DNA of 64,000 bases, taken from Octopus sinensis. Its lineage: Eukaryota. The stretch lies in contig NC_043004.1 of NCBI RefSeq assembly GCF_006345805.1, positions 85,188,001-85,252,000 on the forward strand, given 5' to 3'. The translations under genes and the position numbers were made by a program. Under the pieces are notes generated by a model. The model had not been told where the DNA came from. It did not search any database and was given only the letters and a program-made list of their open reading frames with translations. Positions 10,401-60,384 of the stretch are shown here, piece after piece (the first letter of the stretch is position 1; every line of letters starts with the position of its first letter).

Positions 10401-12169
10401 CTCCATGTCCTCATTGACACACTCGGGTGATCCACTAGGAACCTTTCAAAGAATTGGAAACGTCTGCGCAGGCATTTGAGGCATTTACATCCCCTCCTAT
10501 TACTATCTGTGCCCCGTAGTCTCGATGTGTGTCCAAGGTAGCGTTCCAACCACCCACTAAAAGTAAAGGTCGAGACGTTCCAAGGAAAACCTCTAGACGT
10601 CGAAAGAAACCTTGCCGACTTGTTAAGGGCGATGCATAAACTGTTATCTGCCAAAAAGCACACCTATTACTGCTATCGACATCTAAGTCAACCAACCTAC
10701 CTTGTAGGTCAAGGAAAATTGTCTTTACCTTGAGGTCCAGATTCTTCCGAAGAAGTACCGCGGTGCCACCTCCACCGATTCTCGGCAGACACGGAGAAAC
10801 ATAAATGTTGAAATGTCCGCCGAACATGTGCTGGAGTGTGTAGAATCTGGTCTCACTGATGGTTATGATATGCACATTCTGTGACTTGATGTCAGTTAAC
10901 AAGTAGCCTTGTTTCCAAGGCGACCCCAAGTCACGTATATTTATACAACCTATTCTGCGCATGTTCCTATCGAAAGTTGTGTTTTACACCAAAAGGGAAA
11001 ACGAAAGAAAATGAGAGAGAGAGAGAGTCACTTACTGTCTGAAATTTGTTTGTCCTTCATATTACAGAATTTTCCCAGACGTTATTTGCAGTTTTTTACA
11101 AAGGTATTTTTGAAATCTCTCCTCCTGCATCCAGGTAGAGAGATTTCAGTGCATTGTGTCTGTTCTGTGTTATATATAAGATTTTAATGTGTTGTGCGTG
11201 GCTGTTGTGTGTGGGTAATAATTTGTTTTGGTATAGTTTACTCTTATGTTGGTGTTTGACCTAATGTATTCCATTAGGTTTGGACTGTTAGTGCTTATAG
11301 CTTGTCGACATTGTGGGGCCATTTGATGTTTGTATGTTTGTGTTAATGCTTCTGCGGGTGTTTTGGTTTCGGGAGTGGTAAACCTCCATGTTTTGTTGGT
11401 TTGCTTGTCTATTTTTATTCACTTTTCTCCTCATCCCTCCCGGCCACTTGCCAATCCTCTGTGTCGTTTTTCTCTGAGGACATGTCTGAGGAATCAGAAA
11501 TTGGGGTCTATTTCTGAGTGTGCTGATTTTGTTGTTGGTGTTCGTGCTAGTTGGTGACAGTTGGGATGTGGTGTATGGGTTTTGGGGGTGGGGTATGAGT
11601 CCTTTTGTTTTTCTCTTTTTCCTTTACAGTTGTTGTTCTTCTTGATCATGTTGTCTTTGTTTTTCCTGTTGTTGTTGCTGTACTAATGGCAATTGATTTT
11701 TAGGTGTGATTTGCTACCACAAACTATGCAATGTGTCTTTCTACCTTCGACGCCACATGCAAATTTGGACCGTCTGCCAGTTTTGTAAGAAGTCGAATCA
11801 TTTCAATACTGACTAATCCAATTTTGTTAGTCCAGGACAGCGATTTCCAAAGTGTGGATTAACTCCTCGATATCATAAAATATGTCAGACACAAGCCATT
11901 TTATTTGCATCTCATGGGCATATCTTTGACTTTTATTTTTGTGACTCTACGACCAAGATATGAAGGGATCATCATTAGGTTCTCGTATTCAAAAGGCGTT
12001 GTGTTGAGATCTATAGCTCGTTCTCCACTGTCGAATCTAGCTTCGATCGTGGCAATTTTTTTTTCCCTCTGGTGATGTATTTTTTAAAAGCCCATATAGG
12101 CCTTAAACATTTTATCCTGTTTCTTGGGAGGTAGTTATAATATGTTCATCTTTCTTCAACATTGTCCTG

Positions 12170-16197: not shown

Positions 16198-17447
16198 TTT
16201 TCTTTATTAAACAGTAAGGCTTCGCATAAAAATTCTGGGGGCGATATCGGGCATATCGGGCAAGCCCCGCTGACAGCACTTCCTTGCCAGAAGAATTTCT
16301 CCAGAACTGGCAATGCTCTACCTCTGTAGCGCTGCCAGACCAAGGATTTCTAGAAATTATCGATAGACCCCCGACCCGAAATTCCTCTGGAACATACCAG
16401 CCAGTTGATTTCCGCTGACACCCGAAATCGTTCAAACGATTGTGTCTGCTAGATAACGGTCTCTTTTAGAAACACAAGGCCAGCAGTTTCTTCTGTCACG
16501 TGTTAGCTGGCTACTTCGTCCTCAGTGCTTGGCTAGTGCTTCATTTTACAGAGATAAATTACAGCTCACCTCAGCAGAGTGTGGACTCGAAACTGAAAGT
16601 TTCACTCGAACACTGCATGGTCTTTAGCCAGACAATCAATCCGTTCTACCACAAAGAAGTTCATTGAATAATTACTTATAATATAGAATGAATGCGTCAA
16701 ATTTTAGTGCGAATGTTTATTGGTTCATATTTTACTAACCCCGGATTTATTAAGTCCCTATTGAACCCCTGCTGTTCTATAACTCACAACGAACTGAACT
16801 AGAACAAATACTGCCAAACATTTTGTCCAGCAATTTTTTGAACCCAGTTTACTATTATTATTAAGGATAATATACTACGTCTTATGAACTACGAAATAAA
16901 AATATGTAGTACAAACAGGCTTCTGAGACAAGGCGTTGGAGAGAATGTCTCAAACAAAGCGGAAATATTTTGTGTTATGCCATTCAATGCCTACACATAC
17001 ACAACGCAATATCACTTGATGTTGTTATCAATGACTACCAGGAGTGTAAGTGTTACATAATGGAATTATCGCTTGCACTAGATGATAATGTTTCTCTCAA
17101 TATAACGTAAAAGAATGTACCGAGATATAAATTTGGAGGGTTAGCGATAACGATAACGTTTCAGCGGAAAGCATTAAAAATCCATACTGCCATTGATAGT
17201 TTAGAAATGAGGTGATTGAAATTTGTAACGATGTATTCGTCCTACGTGCAGCTGTATCAGTCAGCTAAGGAGGAATTGACCGTACTTTTCTTGTGGTTAA
17301 CTAATTTCTTATAACTGTAACTACCGTAGCACCTAGTGATATGAAAATAAAAGTTGTTTTTTTAATTAAAAAGAAACGACTTTGTACATTCAGGTGATTT
17401 TGATGTCGTTCCTGTTGCTTTCGGCTTTTCAGTTACTCTCTCTTTTT

Positions 17448-17834
17448 TTTTACTCTTTTACTTGTTTCAGTCATTTGACAGCGGCCATGCTGGAGCACCG
17501 CCTTTAATCGAGCAACTCGAGCCCGGGACTTATTTTTTTGTAAGCCCAGTACTTATTCTATCGGTCTATTTTGCCGAACCGCTAAGAAACGGGGACATAA
17601 ACAACACACCAGCATCGGTTGTCAAGCAATGCTAGGGAGACAAACACAGACATACAAACCACACGCACACACATACATATAAATACATATATACGACGGG
17701 CTTCTTTCAGTTTCCGTCTACCAAATCCACTCACAAGGCTTTGGTCGACCCGAGGCTATAGTAGAAGACACTTGGCCAAAGTGCCACGCAGTGGGACTGA
17801 CCCCGGAACCATGTGGTTGGTTAGCAAGCTACTT
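17448..17834 (-). mobile_element. tRNA-derived SINE, group A: body and tail, interrupted in its head by the 15.9-kb insertion
   Basis: Same sequence as the intact copies at 46296-47185 and 59935-60372. Stops at GTTAGCAAGCTACTT; the missing head resumes at 33706-33742. Confidence 0.9.
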
Positions 17835-18008
17835 TATTTCAAAACATTTGCCATAAAGGCAGTACACAGATTAAGTTAGATTTGCGGGCTGGACGAGGAC
17901 ATTAATGAGGTGAATGATAATGAAAGAAAGATGATAAGGATGGGAGAAGACAAAAAGCGCCCGCCGACTTTCGATTCTCTAAAACATTGTTCATTTTAAA
18001 GATAAACA

Positions 18009-21000
18009 CAAAACGAGGTATTAAACCTCTTACAATTTTTCCAATTTTTGGACTTAGCAGTCCATTATTAATAAAAATACAAAACGAGGTATTAAGCCTC
18101 TTACAATTTTTCAATTTTTGGACTTAGCAGTCCATTATTAATAAAAATACAAAACGAGGTATTAAGCCTCTTACAATTTTTCAATTTTTGGACTTAGCAG
18201 TCCATTATTAATAAGAATACAAAACGAGGTATTAAACCTCTTACAATTTTTCAATTTTTGGACTTAGCAGTCCACTATTAATAAAAATACAAAACGAGGT
18301 ATTAAACCTCTTACAATTTTTCCAATTTTTGGACTTAGCAGTCCATTATTAATAAAAATACAAAACGAGGTATTAAGCCTCTTACAATTTTTCAATTTTT
18401 GGACTTAGCAGTCCATTATTAATAAAAATACAAAACGAGGTATTAAACCTCTTACAATTTTTCCAATTTTTGGACTTAGCAGTCCATTATTGATAAAAAT
18501 ACAAAACGAGGTATTAAGCCTCTTACAATTTTTCAATTTTTGGACTTAGCAGTCCATTATTAATAAAAATACAAAACGAGGTATTAAACCTCTTACAATT
18601 TTTCCAATTTTTGGACTTAGCAGTCCATTATTAATAGAAATACAAAACGAGGTATTAAGCCTCTTACAATTTTTCAACTTTTGGACTTAGCAGTCCATTA
18701 TTAATAAAAATACAAAACGAGGTATTAAACCTCTTACAATTTTTCCAATTTTTGGACTTAGCAGTCCATTATAAAATAAAAATACAAAACGAGGTATTAA
18801 ACCTCTTACAATTTTACCAATTTTTGGACTTAGCAGTCCATTATTAATAAAAATACAAAACGAGGTATTAAACCTCTTACAATTTTTCCAATTTTTGGAC
18901 TTAGCAGTCCATTATTAATAAAAATACAAAACGAGGTATTAAACCTCTTACAATTTTTACAATTTTTAGACTTAGCAGTCAATTATTAATAAAAATACAA
19001 AACGAGGTATTAAGCCTCTTACAATTTTTCAATTTTTGGACTTAGCAGTCCATTATTAATAAAAATACAAAACGAGGTATTAAACCTCTTACAATTTTTC
19101 CAATTTTTGGACTTAGCAGTCCATTATTAATAAAAATACAAAACGAGGTATTAAGCCTCTTACAATTTTTCAATTTTTGGACTTAGCAGTCCATTATTAA
19201 TAAAAATACAAAACGAGGTATTAAACCTCTTACAATTTTTCCAATTTTTGGACTTAGCAGTCCATTATTAATAGGAATACAAAACGAGGTATTAAGCCTC
19301 TTACAATTTTTCAACTTTTGGACTTAGCAGTCCATTATTAATAAAAATACAAAACGAGGTATTAAACCTTTTACAATTTTTCCAATTTTTGGACTTAGCA
19401 GTCCATTATTAATAAAAATACAAAACGAGGTATTAAGCCTCTTACAATTTTTCAATTTTTGGACTTAGCAGTCCATTATTAATAAAAATACAAAACGAGG
19501 TATTAAACCTCTTACAATTTTACCAATTTTTGGACTTAGCAGTCCATTATTAATAAAAATACAAAACGAGGTATTAAACCTCTTACAATTTTTCCAATTT
19601 TTGGACTTAGCAGTCCATTATTAATAAAAATACAAAACGAGGTATTAAACCTCTTACAATTTTTCCAATTTTTGGACTTAGCAGTCCATTATTAATAAAA
19701 ATACAAAACGAGGTATTAAACCTCTTACAATTTTTCCAATTTTTGGACTTAGCAGTCCATTATTAATAGGAATACAAAACGAGGTATTAAGCCTCTTACA
19801 ATTTTTCAACTTTTGGACTTAGCAGTCCATTATTAATAAAAATACAAAACGAGGTATTAAACCTCTTACAATTTTTCCAATTTTTGGACTTAGCAGTCCA
19901 TTATTAAAAAAATACAAAACGAGGTATTAAGCCTCTTACAATTTTTCAATTTTGGACTTAGCAGTCCATTATTAATAAAAATACAAAACGAGGTATTAAA
20001 CCTCTTACAATTTTACCAATTTTTGGACTTAGCAGTCCATTATTAATAAAAATACAAAACGAGGTATTAAACCTCTTACAATTTTTCAATTTTTGGACTT
20101 AGCAGTCCATTATTAATAAAAATACAAAACGAGGTATTAAACCTCTTACAATTTTACCAATTTTTGGACTTAGCAGTCCATTATTAATAAAAATACAAAA
20201 CGAGGTATTAAACCTCTTACAATTTTTCAATTTTTGGACTTAGCAGTCCATTATTAATAAAAATACAAAACGAGGTATTAAACCTCTTACAATTTTTCAA
20301 TTTTGGACTTAGCAGTCCATTATTAATAAAAATACAAAACGAGGTATTAAACCTCTTACAATTTTTCAATTTTTGGACTTAGCAGTCCATTATTAATAAA
20401 AATACAAAACGAGGTATTAAACCTCTTACAATTTTTCAATTTTTGGACTTAGCAGTCCATTATTAATAAAAATACAAAACGAGGTATTAAGCCTCTTACA
20501 ATTTTTCAATTTTTGGACTTAGCAGTCCATTATTAATAAAAATACAAAACGAGGTATTAAGCCTCTTACAATTTTTCAATTTTTGGACTTAGCAGTCCAT
20601 TATTAATAAAAATACAAAAACGAGGTATTAAACCTCTTACAATTTTTCCAATTTTTGGACTTAGCAGTCCATTATTAATAAAAATACAAAACGAGGTATT
20701 AAACTTCTTACAATTTTTCAATTTTTGACTTAGCAGTCCATTATTAATAAAAATACAAAACGAGGTATTAAACCTCTTACAATTTTTCCAATTTTTGGAC
20801 TTAGCAGTCCATTATTAATAAAAATACAAAACGAGGTATTTAACCTCTTACAATCTTTCCAATTTTTGGACTTAGCAGTCCATTATTAATAAAAATACAA
20901 AACGAGGTATTAAACCTCTTACAATTTTTCAATTTTTGGACTTAGCAGTCCATTATTAATAAAAATACAAAACGAGGTATTAAACCTCTTACAATTTTTC

Positions 21001-24000
21001 AATTTTTGGACTTAGCAGTCCATTATTAATAAAAATACAAAACGAGGTATTAAACCTCTTACAATTTTTCCAATTTTTGGACTTAGCAGTCCATTATAAA
21101 ATAAAAATACAAAACGAGGTATTAAACCTCTTACAATTTTTCCAATTTTTGGACTTAGCAGTCCATTATTAATAAAAATACAAAACGAGGTATTAAGCCT
21201 CTTACAATTTTTCAATTTTTGGACTTAGCAGTCCATTATTAATAAAAATACAAAACGAGGTATTAAACCTCTTACAATTTTTCAATTTTTGGACTTAGCA
21301 GTCCATTATTAATAAAAATACAAAACGAGGTATTAAACCTCTTACAATTTTTCCAATTTTTGGACTTAGCAGTCCATTATTAATAAAAATAAACCTCTTA
21401 CAATTTTTCAATTTTTGGACTTAGCAGTCCATTATTAATAAAAATACAAAACGAGGTATTAAACCTCTTACAATTTTTCCAATTTTTGGACTTAGCAGTC
21501 CATTATTAATAAAAATACAAAACGAGGTATTAAACCTCTTACAATTTTTCCAATTTTTGGACTTAGCAGTCCATTATTAATAAAAATACAAAACGAGGTA
21601 TTAAACCTCTTACAATTTTTCCAATTTTTGGACTTAGCAGTCCATTATTAATAGGAATACAAAACGAGGTATTAAGCCTCTTACAATTTTTCAACTTTTG
21701 GACTTAGCAGTCCATTATTAATAAAAATACAAAACGAGGTATTAAACCTCTTACAATTTTTCCAATTTTTGGACTTAGCAGTCCATTATTAATAAAAATA
21801 CAAAACGAGGTATTAAGCCTCTTACAATTTTTCAATTTTTGGACTTAGCAGTCCATTATTAATAAAAATACAAAACGAGGTATTAAACCTCTTACAATTT
21901 TACCAATTTTTGGACTTAGCAGTCCATTATTAATAAAAATACAAAACGAGGTATTAAACCTCTTACAATTTTTCAATTTTTCGACTTAGCAGTCCATTAT
22001 TAATAAAAATACAAAACGAGGTATTAAACCTCTTACAATTTTTCAATTTTTGGACTTAGCAGTCCATTATTAATAAAAATACAAAACGAGGTATTAAACC
22101 TCTTACAATTTTTCAATTTTGGACTTAGCAGTCCATTATTAATAAAAATACAAAACGAGGTATTAAACCTCTTACAATTTTTCAATTTTTGGACTTAGCA
22201 GTCCATTATTAATAAAAATACAAAACGAGGTATTAAGCCTCTTACATTTTTCAATTTTTGGACTTAGCAGTCCATTATTAATAAAAATACAAAACGAGGT
22301 ATTAAGCCTCTTACAATTTTTCAATTTTTGGACTTAGCAGTCCATTATAATAAAAATACAAAAACGAGGTATTAAACCTCTTACAATTTTTCCAATTTTT
22401 GGACTTAGCAGTCCATTATTAATAAAAATACAAAACGAGGTATTAAACTTCTTACAATTTTTCAATTTTTGGACTTAGCAGTCCATTATTAATAAAAATA
22501 CAAAACGAGGTATTTAACCTCTTACAATCTTTCCAATTTTTGGACTTAGCAGTCCATTATTAATAAAAATACAAAACGAGGTATTAAACCTCTTACAATT
22601 TTTCAATTTTTGGACTTAGCAGTCCATTATTAATAAAAATACAAAACGAGGTATTAAACCTCTTACAATTTTTCAATTTTTGGACTTAGCAGTCCATTAT
22701 TAATAAAAATAAACCTCTTACAATTTTTCAATTTTTGGACTTAGCAGTCCATTATTAATAAAAATACAAAACGAGGTATTAAACCTCTTACAATTTTTCC
22801 AATTTTTGGACTTAGCAGTCCATTATTAATAAAAATACAAAACGAGGTATTAAGCCTCTTACAATTTTTCAATTTTTGGACTTAGCAGTCCATTATTAAT
22901 AAAAATACAAAAACGAGGTATTAAACCTCTTACAATTTTTCCAATTTTTGGACTTAGCAGTCCATTATTAATAAAAATACAAAACGAGGTATTAAACCTC
23001 TTACAATTTTTCAATTTTTGGACTTAGCAGTCCATTATTAATAGAAATACAAAAACGAGGTATTAAACCTCTTACAATTTTTCCAATTTTTGGACTTAGC
23101 AGTCCATTATTAATAAAAATACAAAACGAGGTATTAAACTCTTACAATTTTTCAATTTTTGGACTTAGCAGTCCATTATTAATAAAAATACAAAACGATG
23201 TATTAAGCCTCTTACAAATTTTCATTTTTGGACTTAGCAGTCCATTATTAATAAAAATACAAAACGAGGTATTAAACCTCTTACAATTTTTCCAATTTTT
23301 GGACTTAGCAGTCCATTATAATAAAAATACAAAACGAGGTATTAAACCTCTTACAATTTTTCCATTTTTGGACTTAGCAGTCCATTATTAATAAAAATAC
23401 AAAACGAGGTATTAAGCCTCTTACAATTTTTCAATTTTTGGACTTAGCAGTCCATTATTATAAAAAATACAAAACGAGGTATTAAACCTCTTACAATTTT
23501 TCCAATTTTTGGACTTAGCAGTCCATTATTAATAAAAATACAAAACGAGGTATTAAACCTCTTACAATTTTTCAATATTTGGACTTAGCAGTCCATTATT
23601 AATAAAAATACAAAACGAGGTATTAAGCCTCTTACAACTTTTCAATTTTTGGACTTAGCAGTCCATTATTAATAAAAATACAAAACGAGGTATTAAGCCT
23701 CTTACAATTTTTCAATTTTTGGACTTAGCAGTCCATTATTAATAAAAATACAAAACGAGGTATTAACCTCTTACAATTTTTCCAATTTTTGGACTTAGCA
23801 GTCCATTATTAATAGGAATACAAAAACGAGGTATTAAGCCTCTTACAATTTTTCAATTTTGGACTTAGCAGTCCATTATTAATAAAAATACAAAACGAGG
23901 TATTAAACCTCTTACAATTTTTCAATTTTTGGACTTAGCAGTCCATTATTAATAAAAATACAAAACGAGGTATTAAGCCTCTTACAATTTTTCAATTTTT

Positions 24001-27000
24001 GGACTTAGCAGTCCATTATTAATAAAAATACAAAACGAGGTATTAAACCTCTTACAATTTTACCAATTTTTGGACTTAGCAGTCCATTATTAATAAAAAT
24101 ACAAAACGAGGTATTAAACCTCTTACAATTTTTCAATTTTTGGACTTAGCAGTCCATTATTAATAAAAATACAAAACGAGGTATTAAACCTCTTACAATT
24201 TTACCAATTTTTGGACTTAGCAGTCCATTATTAATAAAAATACAAAACGAGGTATTAAACCTCTTACAATTTTTCAATTTTTGGACTTAGCAGTCCATTA
24301 TTAATAAAAATACAAAACGAGGTATTAAACCTCTTACAATTTTTCAATTTTTGGACTTAGCAGTCCATTATTAATAAAAATACAAAACGAGGTATTAAAC
24401 CTCATACAATTTTTCAATTTTTGGACTTAGCAGTCCATTATTAATAAAAATACAAAACGAGGTATTAAACCTCTTACAATTTTTCAATTTTTGGACTTAG
24501 CAGTCCATATTATAATAAATACAAAACGAGGTATTAAGCCTCTTACAATTTTTCAATTTTTGGACTTAGCAGTCCATTATTAATAAAAATACAAAACGAG
24601 GTATTAAGCCTCTTACAATTTTTCAATTTTTGGACTTAGCAGTCCATTATTAATAAAAATACAAAAACGAGGTATTAAACCTCTTACAATTTTACCAATT
24701 TTTGGACTTAGCAGTCCATTATTAATAAAAATACAAAACGAGGTATTAAACTTCTTACAATTTTTCAATTTTTGGACTTAGCAGTCCATTATTAATAAAA
24801 ATACAAAACGAGGTATTAAACCTCTTACAATTTTTCCAATTTTTGGACTTAGCAGTCCATTATTAATAAAAATACAAAACGAGGTATTTAACCTCTTACA
24901 ATCTTTCCAATTTTTGGACTTAGCAGTCCATTATTAATAAAAATACAAAACGAGGTATTAAACCTCTTACAATTTTTCAATTTTTGGACTTAGCAGTCCA
25001 TTATTAATAAAAATACAAAACGAGGTATTAAACCTCTTACAATTTTTCAATTTTGGACTTAGCAGTCCATTATTAATAAAAATACAAAACGAGGTATTAA
25101 ACCTCTTACAATTTTTCCAATTTTGGACTTAGCAGTCCATTATAAAATAAAAATACAAAACGAGGTATTAAACCTCTTACAATTTTTCCAATTTTTGGAC
25201 TTAGCAGTCCATTATTAATAAAAATACAAAACGAGGTATTAAGCCTCTTACAATCTTTCCAATTTTTGGACTTAGCAGTCCATTATTAATAAAAATACAA
25301 AACGAGGTATTAAACTTCTTACAATTTTTCAATTTTTGGACTTAGCAGTCCATTATTAATAAAAATACAAAACGAGGTATTTAACCTCTTACAATCTTTC
25401 CAATTTTTGGACTTAGCAGTCCATTATTAATAAAAATACAAAACGAGGTATTAAACCTCTTACAATTTTTCAATTTTTGGACTTAGCAGTCCATTATTAA
25501 TAAAAATACAAAACGAGGTATTAAACCTCTTACAATTTTTCAATTTTTGGACTTAGCAGTCCATTATTAATAAAAATAAACCTCTTACAATTTTTCAATT
25601 TTTGGACTTAGCAGTCCATTATTAATAAAAATACAAAACGAGGTATTAAACCTCTTACAATTTTTCCAATTTTTGGACTTAGCAGTCCATTATTAATAAA
25701 AATACAAAACGAGGTATTAAGCCTCTTACAATTTTTCAATTTTGGACTTAGCAGTCCATTATTAATAAAAATACAAAAACGAGGTATTAAACCTCTTACA
25801 ATTTTTCCAATTTTTGGACTTAGCAGTCCATTATTAATAAAAATACAAAACGAGGTATTAAACCTCTTACAATTTTTCAATTTTTGGACTTAGCAGTCCA
25901 TTATTAATAGAAATACAAAAACGAGGTATTAAACCTCTTACAATTTTTCCAATTTTTGGACTTAGCAGTCCATTATTAATAAAAATACAAAACGAGGTAT
26001 TAAACCTCTTACAATTTTTCAATTTTTGGACTTAGCAGTCCATTATTAATAAAAATACAAAACGATGTATTAAGCCTCTTACAAATTTTCAATTTTTGGA
26101 CTTAGCAGTCCATTATTAATAAAAATACAAAACGAGGTATTAAACCTCTTACAATTTTTCCAATTTTTGGACTTAGCAGTCCATTATTAATAAAAATACA
26201 AAACGAGGTATTAAACCTCTTACAATTTTTCCAATTTTTGGACTTAGCAGTCCATTATTAATAAAAATACAAAACGAGGTATTAAGCCTCTTACAATTTT
26301 TCAATTTTTGGACTTAGCAGTCCATTATTAATAAAAATACAAAACGAGGTATTAAACCTCTTACAATTTTTCCAATTTTTGGACTTAGCAGTCCATTATT
26401 AATAAAAATACAAAACGAGGTATTAAACCTCTTACAATTTTTCAATATTTGGACTTAGCAGTCCATTATTAATAAAAATACAAAACGAGGTATTAAGCCT
26501 CTTACAACTTTTCAATTTTTGGACTTAGCAGTCCATTATTAATAAAAATACAAAACGAGGTATTAAGCCTCTTACAATTTTTCAATTTTTGGACTTAGCA
26601 GTCCATTATTAATAAAAATACAAAACGAGGTATTAAACCTCTTACAATTTTTCCAATTTTTGGACTTAGCAGTCCATTATTAATAGGAATACAAAACGAG
26701 GTATTAAGCCTCTTACAATTTTTCAACTTTTGGACTTAGCAGTCCATTATAATAAAAATACAAAACGAGGTATTAAACCTCTTACAATTTTTCCAATTTT
26801 GGACTTAGCAGTCCATTATTAATAAAAATACAAAACGAGGTATTAAGCCTCTTACAATTTTTCAATTTTTGGACTTAGCAGTCCATTATTAATAAAAATA
26901 CAAAACGAGGTATTAAACCTCTTACAATTTTACCAATTTTTGGACTTAGCAGTCCATTATTAATAAAAATACAAAACGAGGTATTAAACCTCTTACAATT

Positions 27001-30000
27001 TTTCAATTTTGGACTTAGCAGTCCATTATTAATAAAAATACAAAACGAGGTATTAAACCTCTTACAATTTTACCAATTTTTGGACTTAGCAGTCCATTAT
27101 TAATAAAATACAAAACGAGGTATTAAACCTCTTACAATTTTCAATTTTTGGACTTAGCAGTCCATTATTAATAAAAATACAAAACGAGGTATTAAACCTC
27201 TTACAATTTTTCAATTTTTGGACTTAGCAGTCCATTATTAATAAAATACAAAACGAGGTATTAAACCTCATACAATTTTTCAATTTTTGGACTTAGCAGT
27301 CCATTATTAATAAAAATACAAAACGAGGTATTAAACCTCTTACAATTTTTCAATTTTGGACTTAGCAGTCCATTATTAATAAAAATACAAAACGAGGTAT
27401 TAAGCCTCTTACAATTTTTCAATTTTTGGACTTAGCAGTCCATTATTATAAAAATACAAAACGAGGTATTAAGCCTCTTACAATTTTCAATTTTTGGACT
27501 TAGCAGTCCATTATTAATAAAAATACAAAAACGAGGTATTAAACCTCTTACAATTTTACCAATTTTTGGACTTAGCAGTCCATTATTAATAAAAATACAA
27601 AACGAGGTATTAAACTTCTTACAATTTTTCAATTTTTGGACTTAGCAGTCCATTATTAATAAAAATACAAAACGAGGTATTAAACCTCTTACAATTTTTC
27701 CAATTTTTGGACTTAGCAGTCCATTATTAATAAAAATACAAAACGAGGTATTTAACCTCTTACAATCTTTCCAATTTTTGGACTTAGCAGTCCATTATTA
27801 ATAAAAATACAAAACGAGGTATTAAACCTCTTACAATTTTTCAATTTTTGGACTTAGCAGTCCATTATTAATAAAAATACAAAACGAGGTATTAAACCTC
27901 TTACAATTTTTCAATTTTTGGACTTAGCAGTCCATTATAATAAAAAATACAAAACGAGGTATTAAACCTCTTACAATTTTTCCAATTTTGGACTTAGCAG
28001 TCCATTATAAAAAAAAATACAAAACGAGGTATTAAACCTCTTACAATTTTTCCAATTTTTGGACTTAGCAGTCCATTATTAATAAAAATACAAAACGAGG
28101 TATTAAGCCTCTTACAATTTTTCAATTTTTGGACTTAGCAGTCCATTATTAATAAAAATACAAAACGAGGTATTAAACCTCTTACAATCTTTCCAATTTT
28201 TGGACTTAGCAGTCCATTATTAATAAAAATACAAAACGAGGTATTAAACCTCTTACAATTTTTCAATTTTTGGACTTAGCAGTCCATTATTAATAAAAAT
28301 ACAAAACGAGGTATTAAACCTCTTACAATTTTTCAATTTTTGGACTTAGCAGTCCATTATTAATAAAAATACAAAACGAGGTATTAAACCTCTTACAATT
28401 TTTCCAATTTTTGGACTTAGCAGTCCATTATAAAATAAAAATACAAAACGAGGTATTAAACCTCTTACAATTTTTCCAATTTTTGGACTTAGCAGTCCAT
28501 TATTAATAAAAATACAAAACGAGGTATTAAGCCTCTTACAATTTTTCAATTTTTGGACTTAGCAGTCCATTATTAATAAAAATACAAAACGAGGTATTAA
28601 ACCTCTTACAATTTTTCAATTTTTGGACTTAGCAGTCATTATTAATAAAAATACAAAACGAGGTATTAAACCTCTTACAATTTTTCCAATTTTTGGACTT
28701 AGCAGTCCATTATTAATAAAAATAAACCTCTTGCAATTTTTCAATTTTGGACTTAGCAGTCCATTATTAATAAAAATACAAAACGAGGTATTAAACCTCT
28801 TACAATTTTTCCAATTTTATGACTTAGCAGTCCATTATTAATAAAAATACAAAACGAGGTATTAAACCTCTTACAATTTTTCCAATTTTTGGACTTAGCA
28901 GTCCATTATTAATAAAAATACAAAACGAGGTATTAAACCTCTTACAATTTTTCCAATTTTTGGACTTAGCAGTCCATTATTAATAGGAATACAAAAACGA
29001 GGTATTTAGCCTCTTACAATTTTTCAACTTTTGGACTTAGCAGTCCATTATTAATAAAAATACAAAACGAGGTATTAAACCTCTTACAATTTTTCCAATT
29101 TTTGGACTTAGCAGTCCATTATTAATAAAAATACAAAACGAGGTATTAAGCCTCTTACAATTTTTCAATTTTTGGACTTAGCAGTCCATTATTAATAAAA
29201 ATACAAAACGAGGTATTAAACCTCTTACAATTTTACCAATTTTTGGACTTAGCAGTCCATTATTAATAAAAATACAAAACGAGGTATTAAACCTCTTACA
29301 ATTTTTCAATTTTTGGACTTAGCAGTCCATTATTAATAAAAATACAAAACGAGGTATTAAACCTCTTACAATTTTTCAATTTTTGGACTTAGCAGTCCAT
29401 TATTAATAAAAATACAAAACGAGGTATTAAACCTCTTACAATTTTTCAATTTTTGGACTTAGCAGTCCATTATTAATAAAAATACAAAACGAGGTATTAA
29501 ACCTCTTACAATTTTTCAATTTTTGGACTTAGCAGTCCATTATTAATAAAATACAAAACGAGGTATTAAGCCTCTTACAATTTTTCAATTTTTGGACTTA
29601 GCAGTCCATTATTAATAAAAATACAAAACGAGGTATTAAGCCTCTTACAATTTTTCAATTTTTGGACTTAGCAGTCCATTATTAATAAAAATACAAAAAC
29701 GAGGTATTAAACCTCTTACAATTTTTCCAATTTTTGGACTTAGCAGTCCATTATTAATAAAAATACAAAACGAGGTATTAAACTTCTTACAATTTTTCAA
29801 TTTTTGGACTTAGCAGTCCATTATTAATAAAAATACAAAACGAGGTATTTAACCTCTTACAATCTTTCCAATTTTTGGACTTAGCAGTCCATTATTAATA
29901 AAATACAAAACGAGGTATTAAACCTCTTACAATTTTTCAATTTTTGGACTTAGCAGTCCATTATTAATAAAATACAAAACGAGGTATTAAACCTCTTACA

Positions 30001-31780
30001 ATTTTTCAATTTTTGGACTTAGCAGTCCATTATTAATAAAAATAAACCTCTTACAATTTTTCAATTTTTGGACTTAGCAGTCCATTATTAATAAAATACA
30101 AAAACGAGGTATTAAACGTCTTACAATTTTTCCAATTTTTGGACTTAGCAGTCCATTATTAATAAAAATACAAAACGAGGTATTAAGCCTCTTACAATTT
30201 TTCAATTTTTGGACTTAGCAGTCCATTATTAATAAAAATACAAAACGAGGTATTAAACCTCTTACAATTTTTCCAATTTTTGGACTTAGCAGTCCATTAT
30301 TAATAAAAAAACAAAACGAGGTATTAAACCTCTTACAATTTTTCAATTTTTGGACTTAGCAGTCCATTATTAATAGAAATACAAAACGAGGTATTAAACC
30401 TCTTACAATTTTTCCAATTTTTGGACTTAGCAGTCCATTATTAATAAAAATACAAAACGAGGTATTAAACCTCTTACAATTTTTCAATTTTTGGACTTAG
30501 CAGTCCATTATTAATAAAAATACAAAACGATGTATTAAGCCTCTTACAAATTTTCAATTTTTGGACTTAGCAGTCCATTATTAATAAAAATACAAAACGA
30601 GGTATTAAACCTCTTACAATTTTTCCAATTTTTGGACTTAGCAGTCCATTATTAATAAAAATACAAAACGAGGTATTAAACCTCTTACAATTTTTCCAAT
30701 TTTTGGACTTAGCAGTCCATTATTAATAAAAATACAAAACGAGGTATTAAGCCTCTTACAACTTTTCAATTTTTGGACTTAGCAGTCCATTATTAATAAA
30801 AAAACAAAACGAGGTATTAAACCTCTTACAATTTTTCCAATTTTTGGACTTAGCAGTCCATTATTAATAAAAATACAAAACGAGGTATTAAACCTCTTAC
30901 AATTTTTCAATATTTGGACTTAGCAGTCCATTATTAATAAAAATACAAAACGAGGTATTAAACCTCTTACAATTTTTCAATTTTTGGACTTAGCAGTCCA
31001 TTATTAATAGAAATACAAAACGAGGTATTAAACCTCTTACAATTTTTCCAATTTTTGGACTTAGCAGTCCATTATTAATAAAAATACAAAACGAGGTATT
31101 AAACCTCTTACAATTTTTCAATTTTTGGACTTAGCAGTCCATTATTAATAAAAATACAAAACGATGTATTAAGCCTCTTACAAATTTTCAATTTTTGGAC
31201 TTAGCAGTCCATTATAATAAAAAATACAAAACGAGGTATTAACCTCTTACAATTTTTCCATTTTTGGACTAGCAGTCCATTATTAATAAAAATACAAAAC
31301 GAGGTATTAAACCTCTTACAATTTTTCCAATTTTTGGACTTAGCAGTCCATTATTAATAAAAATACAAAACGAGGTATTAAGCCTCTTACAACTTTTCAA
31401 TTTTTGGACTTAGCAGTCCATTATTAATAAAAATACAAAACGAGGTATTAAACCTCTTACAATTTTTCCAATTTTTGGACTTAGCAGTCCATTATTAATA
31501 AAAATACAAAACGAGGTATTAAACCTCTTACAATTTTTCAATATTTGGACTTAGCAGTCCATTATTAATAAAAATACAAAACGAGGTATTAAGCCTCTTA
31601 CAACTTTTCAATTTTTGGACTTAGCAGTCCATTATTAATAAAAATACAAAACGAGGTATTAAGCCTCTTACAATTTTTCAATTTTTGGACTTAGCAGTCC
31701 ATTATTAATAAAAATGCAAAACGAGGTATTAAGCCTCTTACAATTTTTCAATTTTTGGACTTAGCAGTCCATTATTAATA
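18009..31780. repeat. Satellite, 70-71-bp unit, about 195 copies
   Basis: Unit CAAAACGAGGTATTAA(A/G)CCTCTTACAATTTTT(C)CAATTTTTGGACTTAGCAGTCCATTATTAATAAAAATA; copy number is 13772 bp divided by ~70.5. Confidence 0.98.
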
Positions 31781-31795
31781 CTAACAGTTCAATAA

Positions 31796-33033
31796 TTACA
31801 TATCGTCCTCGAAATAGCTTGTGCCCGCGCCCTCCACCATCAACCACGCCTCCCTCAGAACGTAATCAAGTTCCGAGTTCGCGTCGCCCGGGACCAAGCT
31901 ATAATCTTCATTGAGCTCCTTTAGCCCAAGCGTCACGTCGAACGCCACGGCCTCCACAGCTACCTGCGGAGGCCATTCGGGGTCCTGTGTGAAGGCTAAA
32001 GGTGCTCCCTTGTGGTGCTCTTCCATCATTTTTTTTCAATTTCTCCTCCTCTATAGAAGAGGACCAATACGTTCAGTTCTTTCGTTGGCGGCACAGTTCC
32101 CGCCATCGGTATTCCTTCTCTTGTCGGTGGCACAACCCCAACCGACGTAGTTCCGGGACATTCCGGTGCTACACTGACAGCCGGTAATTGTCGTTTTTCT
32201 TCCTCTTTTTCTTTTTTTTCCCTTTTCAACTGAGGGAGGGTGCGTCTCCTCCGTGGCTGGAAGATTCGCCTTCCTCTCCTCATCCCTATTATCCTTTGGT
32301 GAGCACCCATTGTTGCTCACCTTCCTCTTTCGGCCTCTGTTTGAGGAGTCCTCTGCTTTCTCGGCCGTTATCGTTCCCTCTTCTAGAGGGGTTTTACTTA
32401 ACTGTTCCGGGATCCTATTTTGTTCCCGAGGACAGTTCTTCTTTATGTGGCCAGACTCCAACCACCGATGACACTTAGTGGGGCGACCCTCAAGCATCAC
32501 CGGGTATCTGCACCCGGCCATTTTCAAAAAACCTGGAAGAACCAGATTGCCTGATTGGGTCCACAGGGCCAAAATTGCTTTTGACCCAACCCAAGCAGCC
32601 GCAGGAAGAACTTTTACATTAAGGAGCTTAGTTTCGCTGCCACCCAGACCCCGGCGGATAGTCTCCTCTATCCACTCGGGTTCTATGTCGGGTGGCAGCC
32701 CGCAAATCCAAGCTTTCATCAATTTCTTTTTTTTGTACGTGGGCAGGAATAAGATTTCCTTACCCTCCAGGGGTTGCTAGCAAATTTGCAAGCCTCTTCA
32801 GGGGTGTCAAATAGCAACCACACCGTTGCATATTTGACACCCCTGGAAATGAATTTAATTGTTGGCAAATACTCTTCCAACTCCTTTTCAATTGCCGTCT
32901 TTTCGAATAGGGCGATGGTGTCGAGTGCCTTGGAGTAGGTTCTCAACACCACCGTCCTATCTTCACGGTCTTTTAACCACTTTTTAGGCGGTATGATTTC
33001 CCATTCCAAAATTTTGTTATTTTTCATTGCCAT
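31796..33033 (-). pseudogene. ORF1 (gag-like) of the ORF2-less element, in four overlapping frames
   Basis: Segments align by eye with ORF1 of copies 1 and 2 (LPTYKKKKLMKAWICGLP vs TPSYFGQKVTKVIINNVP). Degenerate knuckle EGRPTKCHRWLESGHIKKNC (second Cys replaced by Trp). Stop at 31796. Confidence 0.75.
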
Positions 33034-33683
33034 GTTTTTTTTTAAATATATTCAAATTAAACTCAAAAAGCAAGAAGAAAAAAGTTCAAAAGTCCAAATA
33101 AAATTTGATAGATTTTTGAAAAAACAAAAAGGAGAAAGCACAACAGAAGGGAAGAAATCAACGGAAAGTCGCAATAAAGAAAAAAAACAAAAGGGGGAGT
33201 TAAATGAAGTTCAAAAAAAGTTAATAAACAGAAAAAACACAGCCAAAATATTCTGGCCTTGCGGTACTCCCGGCCTGGGTTGAACCTGGAACGCCGCAGC
33301 TGCAACACAACCTCCACAAAAATGGGTCCGAAAGGTAATACAATAGTGGCTTATTTTTATAATTTTCTTGCGAAGTACTCTGACAAGAGAATAAGTTCAA
33401 CAAACCCAAACACAGCACTGGCTACCGCCAACGGTAATTTTATCGGTAACTGTATTGAATTCCGAGGATACGCCCCTCCACTGTTTTTTTTTTTTTTCAA
33501 TAAACACAAAAATGGCAGCCGCCGAGAGCAGGCGAAATTGTCTCATAATAATTGGCACGCAATAAATTATGCCCAACTCACAATAAACAAAATCACTTAC
33601 CTCGACAACTTTCCGTTTTTGGTCTTTTTTCTTTAATTGGACGGAGCTGGTTGACTCGCGTCCACTCTGGCTGAACAGGAAGC

Positions 33684-33689
33684 AACTGA
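33684..33689 (-). promoter_or_regulatory. Possible Inr-like TCAGTT near the 5' end of the element (internal Pol II promoter)
   Basis: Minus strand begins ACACATGCGCAGTTAGTCAGTTGC; a short motif at a plausible position, function inferred only. Confidence 0.3.
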
Positions 33690-33705
33690 CTAACTGCGCA
33701 TGTGT

Positions 33706-33742
33706 GTTAGCAAGCTATTTACCACACAGCCACTCCTGCGCC
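33706..33742 (-). mobile_element. Head (A-box part) of the interrupted group A SINE
   Basis: TTTACCACACAGCCACTCCTGCGCC matches the end of the intact copy (47160-47185). Confidence 0.85.
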
Positions 33743-34034
33743 GTTTAAAATTATTTCTTGTCTTTGTCGTTACTGTTGTATTAGTTGTAGTTGAATATTT
33801 ATAAAAAAACGTTTTTTCTCCATCGTTGTTGTATACTGCATGAGTAATGTGGGTATATTTCGAGTCAACACACACACACACACATATATTTATGTATATA
33901 TAGGAAAATGTCCTGTTGAAAATGCACGTAAATGTTTAAAATAAATTATATTTACATATATACCATACTAGTTTCAACTATATTTTTTGTTTAACAATGG
34001 TAAAAGTGTAAAATTAGAAAAAATATAGTTATAA

Positions 34035-39827: not shown

Positions 39828-40109
39828 TGACTGTGCATGTATTTTCGAAAGTACCTGTAGACAAATATACGCGTATCTGTAAATTCACATGCTATAGACA
39901 ATGGACAGATAACAGTTCAACAGTCAACCATGCCTATTAGACATAAGCTATATTAAGGAGAGTGTGAACGGATATCGTATTGAATTATATATGCGGAGAT
40001 TCCTAATAATATATGAATATGTACGTATATCTATATATACATATACATGCACAGGTATATCTATTATCTATTTCTATCTATCTATATATACATATATATA
40101 TATATATAT

Positions 40110-42973
40110 ATCAAGCCCTATGCATAGCACTTGTGGAAACTCACCTCAACCTTGATATAGAGGGCGCAGAAGTACACATACCAAACTATGCCATACTGCG
40201 AACAGACAGAAGGGAAAGGAGCCATGGTGGAGTTGCTGTATACATCCGAGCTGACCTCACACCCCAGGTCTTGATGACATACTCAAATTCGGTATGTGAC
40301 ACCTTAATTGTATACATAAGACAACATAATATAGTCATATGCAATACATATTGCCCACCGGATGCCCCAAATCACATAGGCAAGTTTGAAGATTGCCTCA
40401 CAAGAATTAAAGAAATCCTCATGAATCTGGAACATCACATGACCATATTTCTTATGGGTGATTTCAACTTCCCCAACGTCAAATGGACCGAAGGTCACAT
40501 ACTCTCAGGAATGAATCATTGCAAGCAAGTACAGGTGGAGTTCCTGCTCAACCTCACCAATGCCTTATTCATGGAGCAAGTTGTACTCAAGCCAACTAGG
40601 GCGAATAACATTCTGGATCTCTGCTTCACGAACAATATGGACATCATTCATGATGTGAAAGTGACACCGACATCAGTTTCGGATCACAACATAATAGAGC
40701 TGTCTATGTTTTGGCCGAAAGTGACCAGAGACATACAGCCTAAATGAAGCACCCGAAATCTCTCCAATCTGAACTTCCACAAAGCAGATTGGAAATCGAT
40801 TCAAAAAGAGATCCTCAGAGAGGACTGGCCGGAATGTCTCTCCACACCAGACATTGACATGAAACTAGAATGTTTCATGTCTTCTGTGCAAGCCGTATGC
40901 CAGAAATATGTCCCAGAACACAAGGCCAAAACAAATAGGAGCAGGATTCCAAGAGACAGGAAGATCCTCATGAGACGACGGACGAAGGTTGCAAATCGTA
41001 TCAACCAACGTCCCAAAAGTAGCGAAACGTCCCGCCTAAAAACAACACTGCAACAATCCTATGTGAAGGAGAAAGCAGACAAAGAAGCCTGGGTTATCAA
41101 AGACATTAAATCAAACCCAAAGGCCTTCTTTCATTACGCAAAAGAAACAGTCTCAGTGCACTACAAGATAGGACCCCTCCTCCAAAAGGATGGCTCCCTC
41201 ACAGACAGTCCAACTATGATCAGTGAGATGCTAAATGGCCAGTTCAAAAGTGTCTTTACCACCCCGTTGGAACACAGACAAGTGAACGAACCAGTGGACT
41301 TCTTTTCCGCCTCACCTATAACCAGCGAGGCGGTTACAATAGAATGTATTGACATTAGCGAAAAAGATGTCCTACTAACCATAGATGAAGTGGATACAAA
41401 CTCAGCTGCTGGTCCAGACTGTTTCCCAGCCATCCTCCTCAAAGCGTGTAAGCATGCCCTGGCAAAACCCATCAAGATTCTCTTCCAGAGCTTTCTTGCG
41501 AATGGCAAACTGCCAAGCAAGCTGAAGGAGGGAATAATATGCCCAATACATAAAGGGGGGAGTAGAGCAGATGCCAAAAACTATAGGTCTATCTCTCTGA
41601 CTTCACATATCAGCAAAGTCATGGAAAGGATAGTCAGAAAAAAACTAATCGCATTCCTTGAGGAAAATAACTTGCTGAGTAATACCCAGCATGGTTTTCG
41701 ACCAGGTAAGAGCTGCCTGACCCAGCTCTTACAGCAGTATGACTGGGTGTTGAGGCAGTTACTCAACAAATCAAATGTGGACGTAATCTACCTTGATTTT
41801 GCAAAAGCCTTTGACAAGGTGGATCATGGTATGATATGCCACAAACTACGTGACCTCGGCATAGCTGGAAAACTTGGAGTGTGGTTGCATGACTTCCTGA
41901 AAGATAGGAGTCAGGCAGTAGTGGTTAATGGAGGCACCTCTATGAACACACAAATAGTGAGCGGTGTTCCACAGGGCACTGTCTTTGGACCACTGCTTTT
42001 TATAGTGGCCCTCTCAGATATGCCCTCAAATGCCCGGATGGCCACTCTGGCCAGCTACGCAGACGATACGAAAGTCTCGCAGAAAATACAGAACCCCAGC
42101 GATGTTGCACACCTGCAGCAGGAGTTGGACTCAATCTACAGATGGGCTGAGGATAATAATATGCAGTTTAATGCTGAAAAATTCCAGGCCCTGCGCTACC
42201 AGCATCCAAAACTGAATATTAAACTTACAGGATACACTGGTCCACAGGGAATTTCAATCCCAGAGCCTAAGTCTGTGAGGGACCTGGGTATCGACATGAG
42301 TGATGATACCTCTTTCCAAGTGCACATTACCAGGATGGCGACAAAGTGCAGACGACTGGCTGGGTGGATTCTAAGAACATTCAGAACCAGAGATAAGGAA
42401 ACCATGATGGTCCTCTGGCGGACATTCGTCCTCAGTCGCCTGGATTACTGCTCACAGCTATGGTCACCCACCAGTGTAAAATTAACAGCAGACCTTGAAG
42501 CAATCCAGAGAAGATTCACAAAGAAGATCGTCTCTTTGCAACAGCTCAGCTACTGGGAAAGGCTGAAACAGCTAAGACTCTACTCCCTGGAGAGAAGACG
42601 GGAGAGGTATGCAGTAATATATGTCTGGAAGATCCTTGAAGGAATTGTGCCAAATTTTGGCATTGTAAGCTACACCAATGCTAGAACGGGACGACACTGC
42701 ATAGTGCCAAAGATCCCAGCAATGCCATCACGCTTCAGGACCAGCTTCTGCAACAGCCTGGGTTTCAAGGGCCCACAGCTTTTTAATATTCTCCCAAAGA
42801 GTCTGAGGAACTTGCACAAAGTAGATGTAGCGGTTTTTAAATCAAAGCTGGACATCTTCCTGTCAAGAGTCCTAGATGAACCTACCTCACGGCAAGAGGT
42901 GCAAATGAGAGTAGCTGTATCAAACTCCATTCTTCACCAAGTGCCACATAACAGACGAGGTTCGTCGCAATAA
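40110..42973 (+). pseudogene. APE endonuclease-reverse transcriptase of the CR1-like LINE, with a single in-frame TGA at 40745-40747
   Basis: APE: ETHL, GGVAVY, MGDFNFP, NILDLCFTN, SDHNII. RT: QHGFRPGKSCLTQL, YLDFAKAFDKVDH, SGVPQGTVFGPLLF, YADDTK. ORFs 40013-40747 and 40859-42973 share a frame; the intervening codons read STRNLSNLNFHKADW. Confidence 0.9.
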
Positions 42974-43085: not shown

Positions 43086-43124
<39 letters not shown>

Positions 43125-43125
43125 C

Positions 43126-43191
<66 letters not shown>

Positions 43192-43192
43192 G

Positions 43193-43262
<70 letters not shown>
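43085..43262. repeat. (GATA)n microsatellite
   Basis: Direct reading. Confidence 0.95.
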
Positions 43263-60170: not shown

Positions 60171-60215
<45 letters not shown>

Positions 60216-60372: not shown

Positions 60373-60384
60373 TTTTATGAATAT

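What the first reader, a model, noticed from the sequence alone, without database searches (positions are those of the whole stretch)
17820..33720. ORF1-only L1/Tx1-like retroelement with a 13.8-kb satellite inside it, bracketed by one target-site duplication
Seen: a group A SINE is cut at GTTAGCAAGCTACTT (17820-17834) and resumes 15.9 kb later after GTTAGCAAGCTATTT (33706-33720), a 14/15 match. Between them, on the minus strand, lie a ~670-nt leader, a gag-like ORF1, then 15 bp after its stop the satellite, ~175 bp unique sequence and AATAAA at the junction. No endonuclease or RT is present. Established: TSD plus a 3' poly(A) signal marks target-primed retrotransposition, and ORF1-only L1 derivatives (HAL1) and gag-only HeT-A are mobilised in trans. 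Inference: a non-autonomous Tx1-type family in an invertebrate that has seeded, or carries, a large satellite. Whether it moved with the array or the array grew afterwards cannot be told from one copy.
Basis: partly seen in the sequence, partly recalled or inferred. Interest (0 to 1): 0.88.

Follow-up and report, generated by a model that had tools for sequence, protein, structure and literature searches.

The report
Dead ORF1-only retroelement holding a satellite
An octopus SINE was split by one 15.9-kb insertion, a decayed LINE-derived element that has only the RNA-binding ORF1 gene and a 13.8-kb tandem array in its tail; this is a tidy but fairly ordinary example of a mobile element seeding satellite DNA.

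Summary
A SINE is split at 17834/33721. Both sides carry the same 15 SINE bases (14/15 identical), and intact SINE copies in the window read straight across the break. The 15,871 bp between them hold, on the minus strand, a 672-nt leader, an ORF1 remnant, a 14-nt spacer, about 196 units of a 70/71-bp repeat (18004-31781) and 169 nt of unique 3' sequence. There is no endonuclease or reverse transcriptase.

ORF1 is not open. It has three frameshifts and a mutated zinc knuckle. By fold and homology it is a type I LINE ORF1p: two RRM-like domains followed by a CCHC knuckle. That type occurs in many LINE clades, so the "L1/Tx1" label is not established.

Two relatives in Octopus sinensis (73-77% nucleotide identity) have the leader and ORF1 but no ORF2, no satellite and no match to the 3' end. 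The array is therefore private to this copy as far as could be seen. It also contains 2.9-kb and 7.3-kb internal block duplications, which points to growth at the DNA level.

One thing remains unexplained. All three copies start right after about base 37 of the SINE head, yet only the window copy has the rest of the SINE downstream. No genome-wide copy census was possible.

The parts
33721..33760 (-). 5' head of the target SINE upstream of the duplication (SINE sense is the minus strand: GGCGCAGGAGTGGCTGTGTGGT)
   Evidence: Aligns to the heads of intact SINE copies. Sense is inferred from box A/B-like motifs at this end and an A-rich short-repeat tail at the 17440 end. ARAGORN and Rfam do not call a tRNA.
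33706..33720 (.). Target-site duplication, 5' copy (GTTAGCAAGCTATTT on the plus strand)
   Evidence: Occupies the same 15 SINE columns as 17820-17834 and matches it 14/15.
33034..33705 (-). 672-nt leader (5' UTR). It starts ACACATGCGCAG..., with a GCGCATGCG-like motif conserved in all three copies and a GTAAGT about 120 nt in.
   Evidence: From 33325 downstream it aligns with L002 at 77% identity.
31796..33033 (-). ORF1 remnant: two RRM-like domains, a decayed CCHC knuckle, a basic/acidic linker and a conserved C-terminal part. Three frameshifts.
   Evidence: 60% amino-acid identity to O. sinensis LOC115225585. 24% identity, E 4e-9, to the ORF1 of an EN+RT LINE at about 200-3823 in this window. 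AlphaFold2 model plus Foldseek give a tandem-RRM fold. The family profile hits CCHC nucleocapsid knuckles.
31782..31795 (-). 14-nt spacer between the ORF1 stop and the array. Together with the stop codon it loosely resembles the adjacent start of a unit (17 of about 22 bases).
   Evidence: Direct reading. Not significant in a shuffle test.
18004..31781 (-). Satellite array, about 196 units of 70/71 bp (13.8 kb). Each unit has two short hairpins.
   Evidence: Unit-variant autocorrelation peaks at 41 and 105 units. Unit fold -9.5 kcal/mol, z -3.6.
17835..18003 (-). Unique 3' end of the element (169 nt). It ends ...GGCAAATGTTTTGAAATA with no poly(A) tail.
   Evidence: No other match in the window, L001 or L002.
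17820..17834 (.). Target-site duplication, 3' copy (GTTAGCAAGCTACTT on the plus strand)
17440..17819 (-). Remainder of the target SINE: B-box-like motif, body with an internal microsatellite, and an A-rich tail.
   Evidence: Aligns to 59943-60346 and 46301-47163 at 77-80% identity.

Best explanation
This is a dead copy of a non-autonomous, ORF1-only derivative of a cephalopod LINE.

Its RNA (leader, ORF1, short 3' UTR) was reverse-transcribed at a staggered nick in a SINE, between SINE bases 22/23 and 37/38. The enzyme must have come from an autonomous LINE acting in trans. The staggered nick produced the 15-bp target duplication. This step is shown by the anatomy; the mechanism itself is inferred.

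A stretch of about 70 bp in the 3' UTR, between the ORF1 stop and the last 169 nt, then grew into a 13.8-kb array by slippage and unequal exchange at the DNA level. Most or all of this growth followed insertion. This step is inferred.

ORF1 has since decayed. The array has no demonstrated function.
For: - The target duplication maps to the same 15 SINE columns, and intact SINEs read through the break. A 15-bp duplication with no terminal inverted or long terminal repeats fits target-primed reverse transcription by an APE-type LINE. The pre-insertion site reads GGT|AAGTAG (direct reading).
- ORF1 is a LINE ORF1p. It is homologous to the ORF1 of an EN+RT LINE in the same window (E 4e-9; EN and RT domains). 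It has a tandem-RRM fold followed by a CCHC knuckle. 47 distant relatives were found; of the ten looked up, six carry names and all six are Octopus.
- No EN or RT lies in the bracket or downstream of ORF1 in the two O. sinensis copies.
- Both O. sinensis copies lack the array and the 3' unique part.
- The array contains multi-unit block duplications. 22% of units are identical at shifts of 41 units (2.87 kb) and 105 units (7.33 kb), against a mean of 7.9%. There are runs of 5-6 identical units at those shifts. Such blocks can only form in an array that is already kilobases long, by DNA-level exchange.
- Precedents exist: ORF1-only HAL1 (PMC5753468), trans-mobilised SVA with an internal VNTR (PMC3287187) and retrotransposon-derived satellites (PMC7004042).
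Against: - There is no poly(A) or A-rich tail, and no 3' end shared with any LINE in the window. The partner LINE and the basis of trans-recognition are unknown.
- Only this one copy has a demonstrable target duplication and a 3' end. The relatives are 23-27% diverged, so a closer subfamily with repeats cannot be excluded.
- The flanks of the array are not significantly unit-like, so the proto-unit is not proven to be native 3' UTR.
- Block duplications could have arisen in a progenitor locus before a very long RNA was copied.
- Assembly correctness could not be checked.
Confidence: 0.7

Rival explanations
1. The link to the SINE is not accidental. Either the family homes to one position in the SINE head through a target-specific partner LINE, as Tx1-type elements do. 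Or the first roughly 37 bases of the SINE have become the family's own 5' end, through 5' transduction from a master copy sitting in a SINE or through a template jump onto SINE RNA. This extends the best explanation and does not replace it.
For: All three copies begin within 1-3 nt of the same SINE position and in the SINE's orientation: window GCTAAC|ACACATGCG, L001 GCTTCC|TGTGCATGCG, L002 GCTTCC|ACTGCGCATG. L001 and L002 have the complete head from SINE base 1 but no SINE remainder downstream. They share a missing A (GCTT-CC) and a C at head position 9, which hints at common descent. Each mechanism has a precedent in Tx1-Mar and SINEU (PMC4494074).
Against: There are only three copies. The 3' ends of L001 and L002 are lost or unrecognised and no target duplication was found for them, so homing with later 3' loss cannot be told from a captured head. 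The shared head substitutions are within what chance allows (about 0.2 expected). The window copy has a normal target duplication, so on its own it needs no special mechanism.
Confidence: 0.6
2. The element was retrotransposed with a long array already inside it. On this view the satellite is a family feature carried in the RNA.
For: The array lies wholly inside the target duplication and upstream of a unique 3' end. The array edges are sharp.
Against: Two relatives have no trace of the unit. A 15.9-kb cDNA would be unusually long. Kilobase-scale block duplications indicate DNA-level growth.
Confidence: 0.12
3. Two events: an ORF1-only element inserted first, and the array arrived later inside its 3' UTR with a second mobile element or by capture.
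For: The array flanks show no significant similarity to the unit. The 3' UTR of L002 does not align with the unit.
Against: No second target duplication, terminal repeats or foreign coding sequence flank the array (direct reading). The array starts and ends at nearly the same phase of the unit, with ATAA-type microhomology, as expected for local tandem duplication.
Confidence: 0.08
4. The copies are processed retrocopies of a host gene that was itself domesticated from a LINE ORF1, as L1TD1 was in mammals. On this view they are not a transposon family.
For: The leader has a conserved GCGCATGCG promoter-like motif and a GTAAGT donor-like site in all three copies. One copy is annotated as a gene (LOC115225585). 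Few copies were detectable in protein databases.
Against: All three reading frames are damaged or truncated and the knuckle is lost in two. The donor-like site is retained, so the copies are unspliced. There is no poly(A) tail. The nearest relatives are LINE ORF1s that sit next to EN and RT.
Confidence: 0.07
5. Assembly artefact: the array length or one junction is a mis-join.
For: Long homogeneous arrays are prone to error. Two of the ORF1 frameshifts sit in A8-A9 runs, which is typical of long-read errors.
Against: Both junctions are unique sequence, and the two SINE halves fit each other exactly with a duplication. A chance mis-join would not produce that. The unit variants form an ordered, non-random pattern.
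Confidence: 0.05

Closest known systems
HAL1 (half-L1) of mammals
   Same: A non-autonomous LINE derivative that keeps a 5' UTR and ORF1 only and must borrow ORF2p in trans. HAL1 arose independently several times (PMC5753468).
   Different: HAL1 has the L1 type II ORF1 (coiled coil, RRM, CTD) and a poly(A) tail. Here the ORF1 is type I (two RRMs plus CCHC), there is no poly(A) tail, the host is a cephalopod, and this copy has a large internal array.
SVA (SINE-VNTR-Alu) composite retroelements of hominids
   Same: A non-autonomous composite element inside a target duplication, with an internal VNTR lying between unique modules. It is mobilised in trans by a LINE (PMC3287187).
   Different: SVA is non-coding and ends in poly(A), and its VNTR is a feature of the whole family. 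Here an ORF1 is present, and the two known relatives show no array.
Tx1-Mar LINEs and SINEU of crocodilians
   Same: An example of a LINE and its dependants preferring one site inside another transposon. SINEU also shows 5' extensions gained by template jump or 5' transduction from a master copy lying in the target element (PMC4494074). This matches the recurring SINE-head junction seen here.
   Different: No RT is available to show Tx1 ancestry. The target here is a SINE head. Target preference is not demonstrated: three copies, with only one intact on both sides.
HeT-A of Drosophila
   Same: A gag-only non-LTR element that depends on RT supplied in trans.
   Different: HeT-A is telomere-specific, forms head-to-tail element arrays and has a host function. 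Here there is one interstitial insertion with an internal 70-bp array. (From general knowledge, not tested.)
Satellites born from tandem repeats inside retrotransposons
   Same: A short internal segment of a retroelement amplified into a long array (PMC7004042, PMC6947457).
   Different: Those cases are mostly UTRs of plant LTR elements, with arrays spread over many loci. Here the element is LINE-derived and only one locus is known.

Membership tests
Non-LTR (target-primed) retrotransposon insertion | Target-site duplication of variable length (about 7-20 bp) flanking the whole insert | tested here: met
   A 15-bp duplication, 14/15 identical, maps to the same SINE columns. The empty site is reconstructed from intact SINE copies.
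Non-LTR (target-primed) retrotransposon insertion | Defined 3' end with a poly(A), A-rich or short-repeat tail | tested here: not met
   The element ends ...TTTTGAAATA directly at the duplication with no tail. AATAAA straddles the junction. Many non-L1 clades lack poly(A), so this does not exclude the mechanism.
Non-LTR (target-primed) retrotransposon insertion | No LTRs or terminal inverted repeats | tested here: met
   The termini ACACATGCGC... and ...TTTTGAAATA are unrelated. A self-BLAST of the end pieces finds only themselves.
Autonomous LINE | ORF2 with endonuclease and reverse transcriptase | tested here: not met
   No EN or RT similarity in 17835-33705, nor downstream of ORF1 in L001 or L002.
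Type I LINE ORF1p (Khazina and Weichenrieder classes, as given in PMC4120745) | [quoted passage not shown] | tested here: met
   AlphaFold2 model of the O. sinensis homologue has pLDDT above 85 over residues 10-190. The best Foldseek hits are tandem-RRM proteins. The family profile hits nucleocapsid CCHC knuckles at the next position (Pfam zf-CCHC in relatives). The knuckle is intact in L002 and decayed in the window and in P0001.
L1-type (type II) ORF1p / Transposase_22 | Coiled coil plus a single RRM plus a CTD (Pfam PF02994) | tested here: not met
   No PF02994 match for the window pieces, P0001 or nine relatives. The model shows two RRM-like domains and no long coiled coil.
Tx1 group of the L1 clade | RT and APE fall within the Tx1 group in phylogeny | not testable with these tools
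   The element has no RT or APE. The distantly related LINE in the window matches human L1 ORF2p at only 4e-19, against 1e-13 for R2, which does not resolve the clade.
Tx1 group of the L1 clade | Insertion at one specific target sequence in most copies | tested here: inconclusive
   3 of 3 copies abut about base 37 of the SINE head. Only the window copy has the downstream SINE half.
HAL1-like ORF1-only non-autonomous family | Multiple dispersed copies with ORF1 but no ORF2, sharing 5' and 3' ends, each with its own target duplication | tested here: inconclusive
   Three non-orthologous copies lack ORF2. The 5' ends are shared. The 3' end and target duplication are seen only in the window. No genome-wide search was possible.
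Satellite DNA | Long head-to-tail array of a fixed unit with higher-order structure | tested here: met
   196 units, 95% matches, 70/71-bp alternation, and block repeats at 41 and 105 units.
Satellite DNA | The same unit present at many loci or in large genomic amounts | not testable with these tools
   The unit is absent from the rest of the window and from L001 and L002. The DNA collections on hand hold no cephalopod genomes, and the unit was absent from them.

The most novel reading that the evidence does not exclude
Cephalopods may carry a family of ORF1-only retroelements tied to the genome's abundant SINE. Either the family homes to one position in the SINE head, or it has taken the first roughly 37 bases of the SINE as its own 5' end. 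Its 3' UTR would be a recurrent seed of satellite arrays. That would make it a LINE-SINE-satellite hybrid comparable in concept to SVA, but protein-coding.
Probability: 0.2. Interest if true: 0.6.

Novelty: new member of a known kind. Interest (0 to 1): 0.38.

Why it matters
The locus shows, within a single target duplication, a retroelement 3' UTR turning into a 13.8-kb satellite. It gives a datable, bracketed example of satellite birth in a cephalopod genome, where repeats are abundant but satellites and non-autonomous LINE derivatives are little described. It also shows that ORF1-only "half-LINEs" are not confined to mammalian L1. If the recurring junction with the SINE head proves general, it would document either a SINE-targeting retrotransposition machinery or capture of a SINE head by a protein-coding retroelement. 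As it stands, the element is dead and the array has no demonstrated function.

Tried and rejected
- More family copies through protein searches. The full read-through found only two O. sinensis proteins. The C-terminal 141 aa and the N-terminal 104 aa found nothing. An exhaustive HMMER search with P0001 found 47 relatives, all at 35% identity or less except P0002, so these are other ORF1 families.
- Species or locus identification by exact look-up of the window's 704-aa RT ORF: not on record.
- The satellite 24-mer in the metagenome and prokaryote genome collections: 0 hits, as expected, because these hold no cephalopod genomes.
- Orthology between the window locus and L001 or L002: rejected. 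Only dispersed repeats are shared.
- Target duplications for L001 and L002: only chance-level matches, best 11/15 at L002 17908.
- Homology of the L002 3' region to the satellite or the 169-nt tail: local alignment score 20 against a shuffle mean of 20.8.
- Array flanks as degenerate units: z -0.1 and 0.5.
- BLAST self-comparison of the array for block structure was uninformative, because every shift gives about 96%. It was replaced by unit-variant autocorrelation.
- A tRNA call for the SINE head by ARAGORN and Rfam: none. The SINE's sense therefore rests on box-like motifs and the A-rich tail.
- A DNA transposon, Helitron or LTR element was considered and rejected: no terminal repeats, and a 15-bp duplication.
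- Literature searches for an octopus satellite or an ORF1-only cephalopod element found none. The octopus LINE paper describes single-ORF RTE elements only.
Full report
**1. What is in the sequence**

The window is cephalopod DNA. Its SINE copies are 92% identical to copies in Octopus sinensis loci, and the only close protein relatives are from O. sinensis.

At 17834/33721 a SINE is interrupted. The left piece (17440-17834) and the right piece (33706 to about 33760) both align to intact SINE copies at 59935-60400 and 46940-47215. The two pieces overlap on exactly 15 columns, GTTAGCAAGCTACTT and GTTAGCAAGCTATTT. The intact copies run straight through the break. This is a genuine 15-bp target-site duplication around a 15,871-bp insert (17835-33705).

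The SINE's sense strand is the minus strand. This is inferred from box A/B-like motifs at the 33760 end and an A-rich, short-repeat tail at the 17440 end. ARAGORN and Rfam do not call a tRNA. The insert therefore lies in the same orientation as the SINE, and its 5' junction falls after SINE base 37.

**2. Anatomy of the insert (minus strand)**

- Leader, 33705-33034, 672 nt.
- ORF1 remnant, 33033-31796.
- Spacer, 14 nt.
- Satellite, 31781-18004.
- Unique tail, 18003-17835, 169 nt, ending ...TTTTGAAATA.

The satellite has a period of 70 (141 as a dimer) with 95% matches. There are 195-196 units and none elsewhere in the window. No EN or RT similarity exists in the bracket.

I do not count it as evidence.

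**3. ORF1**

ORF1 is not open. Guided by the O. sinensis homologue P0001 and by L002, the reading path changes frame three times:
- near 32780;
- within the A-rich stretch 32234-32310;
- in the A9 run at 32031-32039.

The knuckle reads CHRW..H....C, where L002 has CYRCLESGHIKKNC. The two shifts in homopolymer runs could be assembly errors. The first shift and the Cys-to-Trp change probably are not.

Pfam finds nothing in the pieces. Other evidence identifies the protein:
- It is 24% identical (E 4e-9) to the ORF1 of a separate LINE at about 200-3823, which has EN and RT.
- An exhaustive HMMER search with P0001 gives 47 distant relatives. Of the ten looked up, six carry names and all six are Octopus; five of the nine scanned show a CCHC-type zinc knuckle, three of them above Pfam's cut-off.
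- A profile of these relatives matches retroviral-type CCHC nucleocapsid knuckles in the PDB.
- An AlphaFold2 model (mean pLDDT 77.6, above 85 for residues 10-190) is best matched by tandem-RRM proteins: SFPQ/NONO/PSPC1 and hnRNP A1 UP1.

Two RRMs directly upstream of a CCHC knuckle define the type I LINE ORF1p. That type is reported from the I, Jockey, R1, Tad1, plant L1 and L2 clades and does not track clade (PMC4120745). "LINE ORF1" is therefore supported and "L1/Tx1" is not established. There is no Transposase_22 signature, and there is no RT to place on a tree. The RT of the distantly related LINE in the window does not resolve the clade either.

**4. Relatives**

Two O. sinensis loci carry the same lineage.
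- L001 (P0001, LOC115225585) is 73% identical in nucleotides over ORF1. Homology is lost about 130 nt after a premature stop.
- L002 is 77% identical, from the leader position equivalent to window 33325 through to the ORF1 stop. Its ORF is also broken.

The loci are not orthologous to the window. Neither has EN or RT downstream of ORF1. Neither has any 70-bp repeat. Neither has similarity to the 169-nt tail.

The ORF1-only state is therefore shared by three independent copies, which makes this a HAL1-like situation (PMC5753468). The array and the tail are seen only in the window.

**5. The array**

Unit variants are not randomly ordered. The fraction of identical units peaks at shifts of 41 units (2.87 kb) and 105 units (7.33 kb), at 22% against a mean of 7.9%. 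There are runs of 5-6 identical consecutive units at these shifts. The array thus grew partly by duplication of kilobase blocks, which is a DNA-level process.

Taken with the array-less relatives and the improbability of a 15.9-kb cDNA, I judge in-situ expansion of a 3' UTR segment after insertion to be the likeliest history, at about 0.7.

The proto-unit is not proven to be native. The flanks are not significantly unit-like. The 22 nt around the ORF1 stop do resemble the adjacent start of a unit (17 of about 22), and the array begins and ends at nearly the same unit phase.

Each unit contains two short palindromes, GGACT-TAGC-AGTCC and GAGGT-ATTAA-ACCTC. As single-stranded DNA the unit folds at -9.5 kcal/mol, z -3.6.

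**6. An unexplained extra**

In all three copies the element starts within 1-3 nt of the same SINE position, in SINE orientation, directly followed by a GCGCATGCG-like motif. L001 and L002 have the SINE head from its first base, but no SINE remainder anywhere downstream.

Three readings are possible:
- the family homes to this site and the two copies lost their 3' parts;
- the head became part of the transposed unit, through 5' transduction from a master copy sitting in a SINE (the window copy has exactly that structure);
- the head was added by a template jump onto SINE RNA.

All three mechanisms are documented for Tx1-Mar and SINEU in crocodilians (PMC4494074). Three copies cannot decide between them. 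The shared GCTT-CC junction and one shared head substitution in L001 and L002 hint weakly at common descent.

**7. Verdict**

It is unproven on clade, wrong to lean on the AATAAA, and probably wrong that the family carries the satellite.

The locus is a new cephalopod example of two known phenomena: half-LINEs and the birth of a satellite inside a retroelement. It also carries one real loose end, the SINE-head junction. A genome-wide census, which these tools could not provide, is the decisive missing step.

Noticed in passing
L001:9451-9487 and L002:15702-15738, compared with window 33706-33760: Both O. sinensis relatives of the element begin directly after the first roughly 37 bases of the same SINE, in the same orientation, and have no SINE remainder downstream. 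This suggests either site preference or capture of the SINE head as a 5' end.
   Followed up: partly
window 46435-47097: A 165-bp tandem repeat of 4 copies (93% matches) made from the body of the same SINE family. It is a second, smaller case in this window of a mobile element turning into a tandem array.
   Followed up: no
window about 200-3823 (-) and 8713-12100 (-): Two related LINE copies with a type I-like ORF1 (CCHC knuckle), an APE endonuclease and an RT, 51-64% identical to each other in protein. Their ORF1 is the nearest ORF1 with an adjacent EN and RT to the ORF1 studied here (24% identity).
   Followed up: partly
window 40013-42973 (+), tail 43086-43262: A different LINE with an EN ORF and an open 704-aa RT ORF, followed by an (AGAT)44 microsatellite. 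It may be a young copy with a microsatellite tail. The exact protein is not on record in the public collection.
   Followed up: partly
window 48926-49612 (-): Fragment of a mariner-type transposase (Pfam Transposase_1, E 1.7e-16).
   Followed up: no
window 18004-31781 (each unit): Every 70-bp unit contains two short palindromes, GGACT-TAGC-AGTCC and GAGGT-ATTAA-ACCTC. The unit folds better than all 200 shuffles (z -3.6). This is dyad symmetry of the kind often noted in satellites.
   Followed up: partly
window 51950-52489 and 63731-64000: Two further tandem repeats: a 183-bp unit in 2.9 copies, and a 27/54/108-bp repeat of about 70% identity that runs off the end of the window.
   Followed up: no
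L002:10001-36638 (gene model P0002): The annotated O. sinensis protein 'K02A2.6-like' is a chimeric gene model. It joins the N-terminus of this ORF1 (85% identical to the window copy) to an integrase (rve) fragment from an unrelated element about 20 kb away.
   Followed up: no
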